Positions 575 to 63,504 of a DNA stretch of 64,000 nucleotides are shown piece by piece. The stretch is from contig NW_026889796.1 in the NCBI RefSeq assembly GCF_033153115.1, positions 7,130,001 to 7,194,000 on the forward strand, given 5' to 3'. Both the position numbers and the translations under genes were made by a program. The notes under the pieces were generated by a model. The model was not told the DNA's origin. It ran no database searches and saw nothing but the letters and a program-made list of their open reading frames with translations. Position 1 is the first letter of the stretch, and each line of letters begins with the position of its first letter. The DNA comes from Saccostrea echinata. Lineage: Eukaryota.

Positions 575-712
575 CTTGTCGGCCGGGTACATACGGTAAA
601 GACTGTAAGGAAGACTGTCCTGACGGGAGATATGGACTTTTCTGCCAAGAAGTTTGCAACTGCTCTTCTTGCGACAAAATTGCAGGGTGCCAGCCGAACT
701 TAACTCATCTGG
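575..712 (+). CDS. Unit A: 8-Cys EGF-like (MEGF10/SREC/Draper-type) exon of a receptor paralog; 5' exons lie outside the window and no TM exon is seen
   Basis: ttgttacAG|CT TGT CGG...CAT CTG G|GTaatc; 138 nt, phase 1-1. Reads CRPGTYGKDCKEDCPDGRYGLFCQEVCNCSSCDKIAGCQPNLTHL. Close paralog of exon 17922-18059, with shared flanking intron (~445-905 vs ~17720-18260). Confidence 0.85.
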
Positions 713-1391
713 GTAATCTTTTTTTATCTCTAGATTTCTAGAAATTTTAGATTATATTTTGAAGGAAACAAACCAGGAGCCAATATGAAAACACCCATTA
801 TAAGATTAATATATGGTATCTTATGTAGTTGCAAAAAGTATTACTATATTTTGATCGGATATGGAGCTAACTGATATGTTTCCCCTGTAGGAAAATGGTT
901 GTTGAAATATGATTATATCGCAGAATGATCATTTAATAAGGAACTGAACCCAATTATGACGTAACAATAAGCAAATGAATACGCACCAAATATGGCTTAA
1001 ATGTATCACGCACTAGATTATCGCAAATGCGTGAACGTCATAAATAAAAATTATGGCAAATCTGCATCAATTAAGAAGTATTTCAGTTCAATAAAANNNN
1101 NNNNNNNNNNNNNNNNNNNNNNNNNNNNNNNNNNNNNNNNNNNNNNNNNNNNNNNNNNNNNNNNNNNNNNNNNNNNNNNNNNNNNNNNNNNNNNNNNNNN
1201 NNNNNNNNNNNNNNNNNNNNNNNNNNNTGTTGAACTCTCGACCTACGGAATATGTCTCCTAAGAGTACAGGAACAGCGCGTGTAGGACAGCGCAGTGCGA
1301 TCCACTAGCATTGCTTTGTGGGTCTCGAGGTTGCTGCTGAAAAAAATCATATGGTGCGAAGTCCGAATTTTTTCTTCGCCTATGCGTTGTC

Positions 1392-1677
1392 TTTGTTGTT
1401 TAACGTACCTTTCGAAAATTTTCCCTCATATGGAAAACGCCACCACTTGCCGGTGGAGGGCTGCAAATTTATACTTATACTCGGCACTCAGGGTCATTGA
1501 GCAGTAAGGGATCTTTTTAGTGCCAACTACTATAGCGACACGGGGCCTCGGTTTATGCGGTCTCATCTGAAGGAGCGGTCTCCATGTCCCGAAGTGGATT
1601 CTAACCCGCCACGTAAGGATTAGCCCTCTACTCCATGATTCTAGAGCAGACATTTTAACCATGGCGCCACGCGGGCG
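1392..1677 (-). mobile_element. tRNA-derived SINE (molluscan Meta/MESC-core type likely)
   Basis: Shares the core gaaaattttxxctcatatggaxacgxcacc..gggctgcaaattt..tactcggcactca..ttgagcagt with seven other copies; A/B-box-like head at the right end. Confidence 0.8.
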
Positions 1678-59800: not shown

Positions 59801-62800
59801 AACATAAAAATCCACAAGTTTCAGATTTTTAGAAAAAATTTTTTTTGATCGATATGTTGTTAACTTGCCAATTTAACACCAAATACAAATGACATTATAA
59901 AGTCACTTGCAACTTTTTTGAGCTTATGACGTTCTATAAACTTCTCAATCTCGCCAAACTATGATAATTTATCGTATATATTTCACTTATTTTGAAGTCT
60001 TGAAATAAAGAAAAAATTATAAGTTTATCTGATTTTATTTTAAGATTTTGATTTATTGAATAATACTATCCATTTTGACATTCATCGTGTCCAGTAAAAT
60101 TGTCATTATTAAGGTTTTTTTCAGTATAGGAGGTATGTAAAGCGTTTCAAAGAGTCACTCACATGTTTAAAAGCATATTTAACACATCCATTCTTTGTTA
60201 GTTGTAGTCACAAATGCCAATACAAAGACAGTGGATGAAAGTGGTCTGAAATGGTGGATTATTTTGGTAGCTTTTGGATTCATTTTTCTTGGAATAGCTC
60301 TTGGTTGTGTCTTCTCGAAGAAATGGTACGCTAAAATATTTGCTCTTTATATGGTAGGCCTAATCATACTTATTCTTCTGTAGGTACTTCTCAGAAAAAA
60401 ATGAAGAACAATATCAGGATATCTTCATCATTTTCTTCCAATGAAAATTTTGTATGTGAGTGTACATGCTCATAATATCCATTATTTTCAAACACATTAA
60501 TTCTATTTACTTCCAATTGGTTAAATTGACCTTTTACAAGTTGTATTGATACGTTATGCTTCATTACTTTGTTGATTATATTATAAGGAAGTAAATATAG
60601 TATGATCACCTAGTATTAAAGATATTTTTAGCATATATCTTAGATACAGTTATAGATAATATATCACATTATTAACACACAAAAATAAAATAAGATTTAG
60701 AGTTGTTCCAATATGATAACATAACAATTTTTCAAACAGTATTGATATAATTTTAATTTTTTTTGTATAAAACATTATCATTTTTACATTCTATTAACAA
60801 AAGTTGGATATATATCAATTAGAATGTATGTGTAAGCACACTGCTGAGTTTTCAGGTTTATTTTTATATTAAACAACAATATCTGAAAAAATCAATCTAA
60901 TCAGTTTTAATGGAAACAAATATGTTAAATTCTTAAAATAAGATGCAGGACTAAACTATGAAGCTCTTTAGTAGATCAACTCACGCTTTACTTCATCATC
61001 GGTTTTGTATACATGTTATCTAAAAAAAAATTAAGCTTTACAAGAATTAAGGTCAGTTAAAAGCTTTGCAAAAAAAGAGAAAAAAACCCGTATATATTCA
61101 AGGAAGATGTTTTATATAGAATTCCATATCTGACAGCCTACTGCTCTAAACAAAATGCTCACAGCCACTGTTTATCTATGATATTGCCTGTTGTGTTTTC
61201 TAGATCGTTTATACGCATGCTTGAAAAAACCCTATGATAGCAAAAATATCACAATAATAAAAATGGCGGATTGAGGCATTATTCCTGTTGAAAAAAATCT
61301 AGACCTCAAATTCGTTGTAAGCAAAATAATGCAGAAAAATTCAATTCAATTGACGAGGGAAAGCTTAAATGGTTATAATATAATGCCAGAAAGAGATCGG
61401 GGATCCAAATATCATTTTATAAAAATTTGTAGGGAGGGTCATTCCTAAGGAGGGCGGGGATACACATTACCTGTATGAACTCTTAATAGAATTTTGGATA
61501 ACATTTGCAGCCATATTCATTTATATTAGAAATACTACAGAAAAATAAAACGTTTGATTAGGGCAAAATATTATATTGTCTTTTACTCATTTATAGTTAT
61601 TAGTAAAAAACAATATTGTGATATTTATTGTTTTTTTTTTCAGATTATGTGATATAGCCAAAACATTAAACCCTATTCAGTCTTTGTGAATTTTCATGCA
61701 TGTGACTTATCTAAATAAATTAACACTACATGTAACTAATATCCGGTTACTTTTCTAGTCAGAAAATATTGGAGTTTGGCCTTTTAATTTCAACAATAAA
61801 TAATTTTCCTTTCTTCTTCCCTCCCCTTCTTCGTGAAAATTTGGAAACATGTAACACAACAGACAGTACCATCTATAAGCAGTTGGCAGCAAGCATTTGA
61901 CAGGGAGCAGGTGGCATTAAGCATTTGGTTGTCGTATATGGAATTCCATAGTTTCAGGTTTTTTTTGGTTTTTTTTTAGGCTTGGCTTAGCCGTGTTTTT
62001 GTTTGAATCTTAGACAAGTAACTATAGTTCCAATTGAAAAAAAATGTACTACTGATTTAATATATCAATTATATGAAAGAGTTAAAATACTAAACAGTTT
62101 GTAGTCCAATCATTTTTCATTAAACATCATACTAATTGCAACAGAATTTATTTGTTAAAAAATAAACTCTAGTTTGCACAAACTAAAAGTGGTCAATCAA
62201 GGTAAAAACATAGAATGGAGAAAAAAGACATTAATATTTGGCCTTGTAATTTAAAAAAAAAATACTACAAAAAATAACTCTAATTCTTTTGTTAATTTTG
62301 ATTTAAATCTTAGTTGATTTTCTTCCCGAATGAAAAGTGATTGAAATGTGTATAATGACATTTATAGCTGCAGTAAAACCGTTTTTACCCAGAATAATTA
62401 ATTCACATTGTTAGTATAATTCAAAGAAAATTTATGCACTTTTATTCTTTTCTAAATTTTATATTCATGATCGATTAAAAAAATCCTTAAAAAAAGTGAA
62501 GCTAAATTCAAAACATCCATTTCAAATTTATATTAACGATGTGGAGTTATAATCTGTTAAACTGCATCAAAATGTTTACATCAAAATTTGCTATCATAAA
62601 AAAATGATTTTTTTTTTTTAAAACTTCAGCGGAACATTTGTATTGTTTAACCGAGTTATTCTCTTTCCAATAAGTAATACCAAAACGTAATTAAATCATG
62701 TCAAAATTATGCCTTCCCTTACTAATATTTTCTTTGATTTTTTTGTTATATATCCTGAGCATGTTAGATATCATTTATCACAAATAATTTCTGTTGCATT

Positions 62801-63504
62801 TAATTTGACGTTGGGTGTACATTTTCGATAAATAAACTATACTATTGACATTCTAAGAACATTTCTATATTTAGTTTGTATTTTTTACACATTAAAAAGG
62901 AATATATAAAAAATTATTTCAATTGACTTTTAACTTGAATTTTAATCTTCTAGCTCGTTTTTTTTTTTTAAATATCCGATATAGTAAAGAATAATGAAAG
63001 GCATTTTCCATAACAATGGGATTCAATATTACTACTACAGTGTAATTCTGACAGCGAGGAACCGTATTTTGAACTTGTATTTTGAAATTCAAAATATTTT
63101 TGATTTAAAAAACAGAAAATTTGGTCCATGCAACAGAAAATCTCAATAAATGCATTATCATAATAAATGGAATTTTAATTTATTTAAATAAAGGTGAAAT
63201 AAGCATAAAGTCTTCAGGAAATGTGTTTCTTATTTTTTTAATGTTGAAGCAATAAACGTTAAAAATGTGATATTGTTTTTGTTTTTACAGCGTAGTAGTA
63301 CGCCAGCCAGCCATCTACTTTCACTCTGATATTGTTAATCACAGAAAGGATCTGGAACAAAACGCATATAATGTTTTGGAGAAAAATAAAGACAAGGAGA
63401 AACATATTTATAGCCAAACACCCAGAACCAGTAGCAGTCTACACGTCTACGTTGAAATTGATGATTGCATCCAAGAATTTTCAACCTCCGATTGCAGTAA
63501 ATAA
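56831..63504 (+). CDS. Unit F: mini EMI/EGF type-I receptor with stalk, 309 aa, sister paralog of E
   Basis: Exons 56831-56934 (MDSVLKLFLLIVSVFV..GICSKTILG), 57063-57112 (EPECCLNYRKIGINCE), 58208-58336 (ECWPGTYGENCKEDCPSGRYGRFCFMVCQCAACSKVTGCPQNT), 58437-58745 (stalk), 60202-60325 (..KWWIILVAFGFIFLGIALGCVFSKK, TM), 63291-63504 (VVVRQPAIYFHS..NAYNVL..HVYVEIDDCIQEF..CSK*). Total 930 nt, open. Exon sizes 104/50/129/124 are identical to E. Confidence 0.88.
58885..59040 (+). mobile_element. Penelope-like 3' terminal fragment
   Basis: ctcctcctaggcctctgatcccacctct..ggggtccgtg..gatcaatcactgttcgttatcttcacc; similar pieces at 9160-9320 and 46630-46815. Confidence 0.7.

What the first reader, a model, noticed from the sequence alone, without database searches (positions are those of the whole stretch)
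575..63504. Tandem cluster of miniature Draper/MEGF10-like receptors with a fixed 12-Cys head and divergent stalks and tails
Seen: six co-oriented units share exon order and intron phases (2,1,1). The head has one Cys in exon 1, CCxNY-x6-C in a 50-65 nt micro-exon, and an 8-Cys exon of 120-138 nt. Cys, Gly and the CCxNY Tyr are fixed while intervening residues vary (CCENYRRVDNKC / CCPNYRKVGSKC / CCRNYRMIGLRC / CCLNYRKIGINC; FCQEVCNC / LCKEVCSC / FCLEKCQC / FCVYRCWC / FCFMVCQC). Known: CED-1/Draper/MEGF10/SREC receptors carry many EGF repeats, CED-1/Draper/MEGF10 add an EMI domain ending in CCxGY, and they act in phagocytosis. Inference: this is a minimal, birth-and-death-evolving family of recognition receptors with a binding head of only ~75 aa. 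Pipelines would probably label them MEGF10-like or miss the micro-exons, so the architecture itself may be undescribed. I cannot confirm novelty without a search.
Basis: partly seen in the sequence, partly recalled or inferred. Interest (0 to 1): 0.85.

Follow-up and report, generated by a model that had tools for sequence, protein, structure and literature searches.

The report
Oyster mini SREC/Draper-like receptor gene cluster
The window holds part of a large tandem array of small oyster membrane-receptor genes, each a cut-down relative of the scavenger and engulfment receptors SREC/Draper/MEGF10, some with an ITAM signalling tail; gene pipelines already predict them, but we found no study of them.

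Summary
Five CCxNY micro-exons (0.24 expected by chance) and five 8-Cys exons lie on the + strand, with ag/gt borders and phases 2,1,1.

Only three of the units are complete ORFs: U4, U5 and U6, about 300-330 aa each. They encode signal peptide, 12-Cys head, stalk, TM helix and Tyr-motif tail. The other units are defective as assembled:
- U1 has a 2-bp shift and no TM or tail exon was found.
- U2 has stops in its exon 1.
- U3 lacks the 8-Cys exon.
- A seventh remnant at 30.0-30.6 kb carries stops.

Every N run lies in an intron or between genes.

Homologues were seen only in oysters (Ostrea, Saccostrea, Magallana, Crassostrea). They get no Pfam hit. RefSeq names them variously: uncharacterized, draper-like, SR-F1/2-like, MEGF10/11, CED-1-like. 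A family profile matches the human SCARF1 N-terminus (PDB 8HN0, E 6e-8), and the short VC...CCxGW...C head aligns collinearly.

This genome has at least 132 matching 8-Cys exons, and 16 of 20 sampled carry the micro-exon upstream.

There are two tail classes. One is ITAM-like (U2 is canonical, U4 is half). The other has a YxEI motif (U5, U6).

Recent duplicates give dN/dS of 0.56-0.65, so positive selection is not shown. No RNA data could be obtained for this window.

Verdict: a real, little-studied variant of a known receptor kind. The immune function is inferred. The scan's earlier notes are on this same window only.

The parts
575..712 (+). U1 8-Cys EGF exon (138 nt, phase 1/1). U1's exon 1 and micro-exon lie upstream of the window, at L004:8977-9110 and about 9222-9272. 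No TM or tail exon was found downstream.
9543..9665 (+). U2 homologue of exon 1, broken: in-frame stops and a 5-bp deletion relative to U1
9776..9828 (+). U2 micro-exon (CCENYRRVDNKCE). An alternative acceptor would start it at 9764.
17922..18059 (+). U2 8-Cys EGF exon. The 8-kb intron before it holds inserted repeats and two N gaps.
19668..19802 (+). U2 TM exon (borders approximate)
20452..20667 (+). U2 tail exon ending in a stop. The canonical ITAM YGHL-x6-YDTL is at 20599-20640.
22978..23084 (+). U3 exon 1 (signal peptide plus GVC), phase 2
23509..23561 (+). U3 micro-exon (CCPNYRKVGPKCE). U3 is an 87%-identical copy of U4's 5' part and lacks the 8-Cys exon.
30045..30575 (+). Seventh, degraded unit: the end of an exon 1 (..PDGVCNK|gt) at 30045-30101 and an EGF-exon remnant with stops at 30486-30575
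32588..32694 (+). U4 exon 1
33119..33171 (+). U4 micro-exon (CCPNYRKVGSKCE)
35735..35854 (+). U4 8-Cys EGF exon (120 nt)
40108..40252 (+). U4 TM exon (borders approximate). It holds the chance CCPNY match at 40223.
42331..42907 (+). U4 tail exon, class A: half ITAM (EPYDTLNL), an FKPK-like motif and LRYSFASST near the end
48291..48394 (+). U5 exon 1
48523..48572 (+). U5 micro-exon (50 nt, CCRNYRMIGLRCE)
49018..49146 (+). U5 8-Cys EGF exon (129 nt)
49278..49583 (+). U5 stalk exon (borders approximate)
50548..50671 (+). U5 TM exon
51437..51653 (+). U5 tail exon, class B (QPSIYFH ... NIYDEI)
56831..56934 (+). U6 exon 1
57063..57112 (+). U6 micro-exon (50 nt, CCLNYRKIGINCE)
58208..58336 (+). U6 8-Cys EGF exon (129 nt)
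58437..58739 (+). U6 stalk exon (borders approximate)
60202..60325 (+). U6 TM exon
63291..63504 (+). U6 tail exon, class B (QPAIYFH ... AYNVL ... HVYVEI), with its stop at 63502-63504

Best explanation
The window is a 64-kb slice of a longer tandem array (at least 7.06-7.36 Mb of contig C47) of small type I membrane-protein genes. The family is lineage-expanded and was seen only in oysters.

Each intact gene encodes, in order:
- a signal peptide;
- a 12-Cys ectodomain head, made of a short G-V-C...CCxNYRxxGxxC-E-E-C stretch followed directly by one MEGF/laminin-type EGF module;
- a variable stalk;
- one TM helix;
- a cytoplasmic tail with tyrosine motifs.

The head is a cut-down version of the N-terminus of class F scavenger receptors (SREC/SCARF) and their Draper/CED-1/MEGF10 relatives.

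Two tail classes sit side by side. Class A is ITAM-like, YxxL-x6-YN/D-I/T-L (U2, half in U4). Class B has QPxIYFH...YxEI (U5, U6).

The array grows by segmental duplication and loses copies. In this window three units are intact and four are defective.

Inferred, not shown: the proteins sit on hemocytes or other cells as ligand or particle sensors. Class A members would then signal through phospho-ITAM and a Syk-type kinase, as Draper does in flies.
For: Anatomy. Complete GT-AG ORFs of about 300-330 aa exist for U4-U6.

Family:
- The profile of the 8-Cys exon finds 543 proteins. Many are 150-420 aa with the domain at residues about 50-94 and CCxNY at about 36-42.
- For homologues, whole 151-248 aa proteins sit on 0.9-1.4 kb Logan contigs, which means spliced mRNA.

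Kinship:
- SCARF1 8HN0 at E 6e-8, with the head aligned collinearly.
- SCARF1 and Tie2 EGF are top structural neighbours of a model whose ectodomain has pLDDT above 95.
- The Atlas neighbours agree.
- The head HMM reaches the CCxGY end of long MEGF10-like proteins.

Expansion:
- At least 132 exon matches in the 923-Mb genome, and 16 of 20 sampled have the micro-exon upstream.
- U5 and U6 have 82-93% identical twins about 150 kb downstream.

Tails:
- Canonical ITAM in U2.
- ITAM in 8 of 44 family tails against 0.31 in shuffles.
- The motif is conserved across Ostrea, Saccostrea, Magallana and Crassostrea.
- A and B types share contigs in S. cucullata.

Context:
- ITAM-Syk signalling exists in oyster hemocytes (PMC6994640).
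- Many 'draper-like' genes are hemocyte-expressed in C. virginica (PMC13070813).
Against:
- No ligand, localisation or expression data for any member.
- No Pfam domain is recognised.
- The structural matches are weak (Z 4.8 or below).
- The head's match to SCARF1 is only 11.7 bits on its own.
- The only canonical ITAM in the window belongs to U2, whose exon 1 is broken.
- dN/dS of 0.56-0.65 shows relaxed constraint rather than clear selection.
- The hemocyte papers concern the broad draper-like group, not proven members of this family.
Confidence: 0.7

Rival explanations
1. The genes are real, but they are not immune or engulfment receptors. They would serve cell adhesion, development, or another signalling task such as shell or tissue remodelling. 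The ITAM-like motif would act as a generic SH2 or endocytosis signal.
For: No functional data exist. SCARF2 has no known scavenging role (PMC8487046, abstract seen). Tie2-type EGF modules also match. The head exons are the best conserved parts of recent duplicates, which is not what a fast-evolving pathogen sensor would show.
Against: Massive tandem expansion with decay is typical of bivalve immune families (titles and abstracts listed). The ITAM is conserved across genera. The closest characterised relatives are scavenger and engulfment receptors.
Confidence: 0.17
2. This stretch of the array is largely a graveyard. Most units are pseudogenes or fragments, and the apparently intact ones are drifting copies without function.
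For: Four of the seven units are defective as assembled. Stalk exons evolve nearly neutrally and overall dN/dS is 0.56-0.65. The U6 twin has a premature stop. Transposon debris is everywhere.
Against: U4, U5 and U6 keep complete ORFs, all 12 Cys and canonical splice sites. The head exons are 96-98% identical between twins whose introns are 82-93% identical. Homologues are transcribed in other oysters. Some of the defects may be assembly errors near gaps.
Confidence: 0.1
3. The 8-Cys exons belong to one long multi-EGF MEGF10-like gene, and the 'units' are artefacts of reading.
For: Proteins with two or three head-plus-EGF modules exist in O. edulis (P0095, P0046, P0067).
Against: Each unit has its own ATG and signal-peptide exon, TM exon and stop-terminated tail. 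Single-module homologues are modelled in RefSeq and assembled as mRNA.
Confidence: 0.03

Closest known systems
Class F scavenger receptors SREC-I/SCARF1 and SREC-II/SCARF2 (human SCARF1 N-terminal fragment, PDB 8HN0/8HNA)
   Same: Type I membrane protein. The short N-terminal V-C...CCxG/N-W/Y-x6-C head is followed by a CxPGxxGxxCxxxCPxxxxGxxCxxxCxC...GxC EGF module, and the profile match is E 6e-8. [quoted passage not shown]
   Different: The ectodomain has one EGF module instead of a long curved row of them. About 22 residues between head and EGF in SCARF1 are absent here. The tails are unrelated and short, with ITAM-like or YxEI motifs. There are dozens to hundreds of tandem copies rather than two genes.
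Draper / CED-1 / MEGF10-11 / PEAR1 engulfment receptors
   Same: Both have a CCx(G/N)Y...C motif before MEGF-type EGF, and the ITAM in the tail of class A parallels Draper's ITAM. The nearest named Atlas clusters belong to this group, and there is a weak EGF_PEAR1L match.
   Different: No recognisable EMI domain, only its last ~12 residues. A single EGF module. No NPxY motif was seen in the tails read.
Insect Nimrod superfamily gene cluster (NimA/B/C, Eater); from my own knowledge and PMC4073527 (title and abstract only)
   Same: A tandem cluster of receptor genes that share a CCxGY-type motif ahead of Cys-rich repeats, linked to phagocytosis.
   Different: The repeat here is MEGF/laminin-type, not the NIM repeat. 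There is one repeat, not many. There is no evidence of orthology.
Oyster ITAM receptor CgIgR with Syk signalling (PMC6994640)
   Same: An oyster membrane receptor with a cytoplasmic ITAM, which shows that the downstream pathway exists in oyster hemocytes.
   Different: That receptor has an immunoglobulin-type ectodomain and is unrelated in sequence.

Membership tests
SREC/SCARF (class F scavenger receptors) | N-terminal short Cys head (VC...CCxGW-x6-C) followed by MEGF-type EGF | tested here: met
   Profile A2 against PDB gives SCARF1 8HN0 at E 6.1e-8. The EGF part scores 30 bits and the head aligns collinearly, but at only 11.7 bits.
SREC/SCARF (class F scavenger receptors) | Ectodomain made of many tandem EGF-like repeats | tested here: not met
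   There is one 8-Cys module per unit, and the stalk has no Cys pattern.
SREC/SCARF (class F scavenger receptors) | Type I topology: signal peptide plus a single TM helix | tested here: met
   Hydrophobic exon 1 and TM exons. The AF2 model of the homologue P0021 has helices at 2-19 and 114-147.
SREC/SCARF (class F scavenger receptors) | Binding of modified LDL or other polyanionic ligands | not testable with these tools
   Needs recombinant ectodomain assays.
Draper/CED-1/MEGF10 | EMI domain (Pfam PF07546) at the N-terminus | tested here: not met
   No EMI hit at E <= 1 for seven mini-family homologues, five single-head and two two-head, nor at E <= 10 for the exon peptides. Only the terminal CCxNY...C remains; the head HMM reaches the CCxGY end of long relatives.
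Draper/CED-1/MEGF10 | EGF_PEAR1L/NIM-type module right after the CC motif | tested here: inconclusive
   PF23301 scores E 0.0012 and 19.2 bits against a cut-off of 37.5, and only for U4's exon.
Draper/CED-1/MEGF10 | Tail with NPxY and YxxL/ITAM | tested here: inconclusive
   ITAM is present in U2 and in class A homologues. No NPxY was seen in the four tails read.
Nimrod superfamily | NIM repeats (CxPxCxxxCxNGxCxxPxxCxCxxGY) after the CCxGY motif | tested here: not met
   By reading, the consensus of the 8-Cys exon does not fit the NIM pattern. No formal model search was run.
ITAM-bearing immunoreceptors | YxxL/I-x6-8-YxxL/I in the cytoplasmic tail | tested here: met
   U2 has YGHL-x6-YDTL at 20599-20640. 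It occurs in 8 of 44 family tails against 0.31 in shuffles, with the caveat that the sequences are related. U4 keeps only the second half.
ITAM-bearing immunoreceptors | Phosphorylation-dependent recruitment of a Syk-family kinase | not testable with these tools
   Needs biochemical assay.

The most novel reading that the evidence does not exclude
Oysters keep a diversified repertoire of roughly a hundred or more one-module SREC-like receptors. The genes are arranged in clusters that pair ITAM-bearing (class A) with YxEI-bearing (class B) members, and this pairing is conserved across genera. That would be an invertebrate counterpart of vertebrate paired-receptor clusters, built on an EGF scaffold rather than an Ig or lectin one, and used by hemocytes to tune engulfment.
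Probability: 0.15. Interest if true: 0.7.

Novelty: new variant of a known kind. Interest (0 to 1): 0.45.

Why it matters
Bivalve immunity rests on expanded innate receptor families such as TLR, C1q and lectins. This family would add a membrane-bound, EGF-scaffold family that carries its own ITAM. It links the ancient CED-1/Draper/SREC engulfment receptors to Syk-type signalling in molluscs.

The family is invisible to Pfam and inconsistently named in RefSeq, so transcriptome studies probably scatter its members among 'uncharacterized' and various '-like' labels. A defined family model would let copy number, presence/absence variation and hemocyte expression be measured properly.

The roughly 60-residue head that follows the signal peptide is also a convenient minimal module for studying what the SREC/Draper N-terminus binds.

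Tried and rejected
- A degenerate DNA pattern for the micro-exon in the whole genome was too unspecific: 124 hits against 72 for the control.
- Pfam on the exons and on homologues gave nothing above cut-off. A near-cut-off ISK_Channel hit covers only the TM and juxtamembrane stretch, and I take it as compositional.
- Foldseek and VIA-align gave only weak matches (E about 0.1, Z 4.8 or below). This is consistent with SCARF1/Tie2 EGF but proves nothing alone.
- Paper searches for LOC identifiers of homologues, and for PDB 6U11 (the best PDB hit, 'EGF-like domain-containing protein'), found nothing.
- A search for U1's TM and tail exons between 713 and 9300 found none.
- Joined spliced proteins were not sent to any search tool. 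Exons were searched one by one by reference, and database homologues stood in for the joined product. Spliced models were only checked for frame and stops in a local script.
- Positive selection on the head is not supported.
- The reading as one long multi-EGF gene is rejected.
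Full report

A degenerate pattern for Cys-Cys-x-Asn-Tyr gives six matches in the window, all on the + strand. Shuffles give 0.24 on average and never more than two.

Five of the six sit in short open stretches bounded by an AG acceptor and by ..TGT GAA G|gt. 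They read CCENYRRVDNKCE, CCPNYRKVGPKCE, CCPNYRKVGSKCE, CCRNYRMIGLRCE and CCLNYRKIGINCE. The sixth, at 40223, is a chance match inside the TM exon of unit 4.

A six-frame scan finds five 8-Cys open stretches on the + strand. With their ag|..|gt borders they are exons of 138, 138, 120, 129 and 129 nt, entered and left in phase 1. Their alignment has 18 invariant columns, including all eight Cys.

First exons with an ATG, a hydrophobic signal-like stretch and G-V/I-C end in phase 2 in U3, U4, U5 and U6. The micro-exons are 50-53 nt.

**2. Gaps**

The window has seven N runs: the six listed plus 37915-38083. None touches an exon, and no reading frame is carried across one.
- 1097-1227 lies downstream of U1's 8-Cys exon.
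- 13492-13664 and 16673-16842 lie in U2's 8-kb intron 2.
- 25089-25274 lies in the U3 remnant.
- 28819-28978 lies between the U3 remnant and a degraded unit.
- 36647-36808 and 37915-38083 lie in U4's intron 3.

Contiguity across them is unverified, so U2 and U4 as single genes rest on the assembly. U5 and U6 are gap-free.

**3. Gene models and state of each unit**

*Intact units.* For U4, U5 and U6, a local script finds combinations of canonical splice sites that give complete ORFs of about 300-330 aa: exon 1, micro-exon, 8-Cys exon, stalk exon (U5 and U6 only), TM exon, tail exon. The stalk and TM borders are ambiguous without RNA.

*U1.* Its exon 1 and micro-exon lie just upstream of the window (L004:8977-9110 and about 9222-9272). 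Exon 1 is open and ends in phase 2. The micro-exon carries a 2-bp deletion relative to U2, which leaves no in-frame acceptor. No TM or tail exon was found between 713 and 9300.

*U2.* It is the paralogue of U1, with 75-82% nucleotide identity around the micro-exon and the 8-Cys exon. Its intron 2 is swollen from about 0.8 kb to 7.5 kb. Its exon 1 homologue (9543-9665) has stops and a 5-bp deletion. From the micro-exon onward it stays open, through a TM exon to a tail that ends at 20667.

*U3.* It is an 87%-identical copy of U4's 5' part (22574-24238 against 32186-33850). The roughly 1.6 kb that holds U4's 8-Cys exon is replaced by 78 bp, so U3 has only exons 1 and 2.

*Seventh unit.* A degraded unit lies at 30045-30575: the end of an exon 1, then an EGF remnant with stops.

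In this window, then, three units are intact and four are defective as assembled. Assembly errors near gaps could account for some of the defects.

**4. What the proteins are**

*Family search.* A profile of the five 8-Cys exons, searched against 1.84 billion representatives, finds 543 proteins. Besides long multi-EGF proteins, there are dozens of proteins of 150-420 aa with a single match at residues about 50-94 and CCxNY at about 36-42.

Thirty of these align well over G-V-C...CCxNYRxVGxxCEECWPGTxGxNCxxxCPxGFYGRFCxEKCxCxxCDKVxGC, followed by a TM segment.

*Sources and names.* All the clusters whose sources I looked up come from oysters: Ostrea edulis, Saccostrea cucullata and echinata, Magallana gigas and angulata, Crassostrea virginica. 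[quoted passage not shown]

*Evidence of splicing in homologues.* Several whole proteins of 151-248 aa sit on Logan contigs of only 0.9-1.4 kb. For genes with five or six exons spread over 3-10 kb, that means spliced mRNA. The one-head, one-EGF product is therefore real in related oysters.

*Species.* The window's own species is not among these. The best identity is about 70%.

I sent no joined spliced protein to any search tool. Exons were searched by reference, and the database homologues served as full-length stand-ins.

**5. Relation to known families**

*Pfam.* It sees nothing in the seven mini-family homologues scanned (five single-head, two two-head). In the exons it sees only a sub-threshold EGF_PEAR1L match. 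Long MEGF10-like oyster proteins scanned as controls light up with EGF_laminin, EGF_PEAR1L and others.

*PDB.* The family profile matches:
- an 'EGF-like domain-containing protein' (6U11, E 1e-10), which I could not identify further;
- the N-terminal fragment of human SCARF1 (8HN0, E 6e-8);
- Tie2 EGF domains (E about 4e-3).

In SCARF1 both parts align in order. HVCVASSPSAELQCCAGWRQKDQEC aligns with the head (11.7 bits, weak alone). RCKPGFFGAHCSSRCPGQYWGPDCRESCPC...TGAC aligns with the 8-Cys module (30 bits). About 22 SCARF1 residues between the two have no counterpart.

*Structure.* An AlphaFold model of homologue P0021 built from the family alignment has pLDDT above 95 over the ectodomain, plus a TM helix. 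Its best structural neighbours are Tie2 EGF, EphA2 CRD and SCARF1, but weakly so (Foldseek E about 0.1; Z 4.8 and 3.6).

*Other lines.*
- A head-only HMM finds the same head, once or repeated, in many short oyster proteins. It also finds, weakly, the CCxGY...C end of the EMI region of long MEGF10-like proteins.
- The ESM Atlas puts the family nearest to unnamed molluscan clusters of 70-130 members, then to MEGF10, Draper, PEAR1 and SCARF2.

The family is thus a minimal offshoot of the SREC/Draper/MEGF10 group. Its head resembles SCARF1's short N-terminus more than a full EMI domain.

**6. Tails**

*Class A (U2, U4 and homologues P0015, P0073, P0101, P0148, P0152 and others).* It carries Y-x-x-L-x6-Y-N/D-I/T-L-x-L, and often an F-K-P-K motif and a terminal L-R-Y-S-F motif. 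U2 has a canonical ITAM, YGHL-x6-YDTL, at 20599-20640. U4 keeps only the second half. Canonical ITAMs occur in 8 of 44 family tails against 0.31 in shuffles. The sequences are related, so this shows conservation, not independent occurrence.

*Class B (U5, U6, P0018, P0100, P0070, P0089).* It has K-K-W/C after the TM segment, then Q-P-x-I/V-Y-F-H, A-Y-x-x-L, and V/I-Y-x-E-I/M. From general knowledge, YxEI resembles Src-family SH2 ligands; this is inference.

Classes A and B lie on the same contigs in S. cucullata, as they do here.

**7. Size and dynamics of the family**

The genome is 923 Mb. A search with U6's 8-Cys exon gives at least 132 matches at E <= 1e-3. Only 150 of 725 candidates were scored, so this is a lower bound.

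The matches are concentrated on contig C47 (7.06-7.36, 7.93-8.13 and 11.4-12.4 Mb) and in clusters on C24/C62, C54, C56, C52, C11 and C84.

Of 20 sampled matches, 16 have a CCx(N/G/S)(Y/F)...C micro-exon within 4 kb upstream on the same strand.

The block U2-U4-U5-U6 recurs about 150 kb downstream. The twins show the following:
- U5 and its twin are 91-93% identical in introns and 96-98% in the head exons. dS is 0.094 and dN/dS is 0.56.
- U6 and its twin are 78-85% identical in introns. dS is 0.136 and dN/dS is 0.65.
- The stalk exons are nearly neutral.
- The U6 twin has a premature stop near its end.

This is duplication with relaxed constraint and decay. Positive selection on the head is not shown, and the counts are small.

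**8. Function**

*Shown.* The anatomy, the kinship, the expansion, and transcription of homologues.

*Inferred.* Surface receptors whose head binds a ligand or dimerises. SCARF1's N-terminal fragment forms homodimers in crystals (PMC11563577). Class A members would signal through ITAM and a Syk-type kinase. Oysters have an ITAM-Syk pathway that promotes hemocyte phagocytosis (PMC6994640). Many 'draper-like' and 'SR-F2-like' transcripts are hemocyte-expressed in C. virginica (PMC13070813), though those need not be members of this family.

No paper that we found describes this family.

**9. Verdict**

The finding is real and well read. The family is a new variant of a known receptor kind. It is already modelled, though inconsistently named, by annotation pipelines, and as far as I could search it has not been studied. 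Interest is moderate.

Noticed in passing
window 5300-8800 (- strand ORFs such as 6450-6803 and 7521-7793) and 43200-45150: Fragments of a retroelement-like sequence recur between and inside the units. Pieces at 5787-6629 match 33932-34201, 43557-45142 and 8280-8799 at 70-80% identity.
   Followed up: no
window 1387-1620, 3139-3341, 8958-9140, 27109-27353, 46976-47316, 54952-55284, 55844-56488: A short dispersed repeat of about 200-330 bp, with 72-86% identity between copies in both orientations. It has an open frame reading ..PLENFSLIW.. and is probably a SINE-like element.
   Followed up: no
window 34776-35373 vs 49817-50423 (inverted): A 600-bp element, 90% identical, sits in U4's intron 2 and, inverted, in U5's intron between the stalk and TM exons. 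It lies inside the stretch that U3 lacks.
   Followed up: partly
G000 contigs C24 and C62 (for example C24:3297037 / C62:760911 and C24:2222960 / C62:1929146): Family exon matches on C24 and C62 come in pairs with identical scores, in mirrored order. They are either uncollapsed haplotigs or a large inverted duplication, and they would inflate copy counts.
   Followed up: no
homologues P0095, P0067, P0046, P0091, P0126 (Ostrea edulis and others): Some family proteins carry the whole head-plus-EGF module two or three times before the TM segment. The module is therefore a duplicable cassette.
   Followed up: partly
homologue P0018 residues 199-243 (class B TM and juxtamembrane; equivalent to window 60202-60325 plus the start of 63291-63504): Pfam ISK_Channel (KCNE potassium-channel subunit) scores 21.3 bits against a cut-off of 22.1 on the TM plus K-K-C...Q-P-x-V-Y-F-H stretch. 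It is probably compositional.
   Followed up: no
window 22548-22607: A short open frame reads ..DYSILNLTV.., like the second half of the class A ITAM. It lies just upstream of U3's exon 1, at the edge of the U3/U4 duplicated block, and may be a relic of a lost tail exon.
   Followed up: no
L001:8045-8245 (G000:C47, about 7357045-7357245): The twin of U6 has a premature stop eight codons before the position of U6's stop. The YVEI motif is kept.
   Followed up: partly
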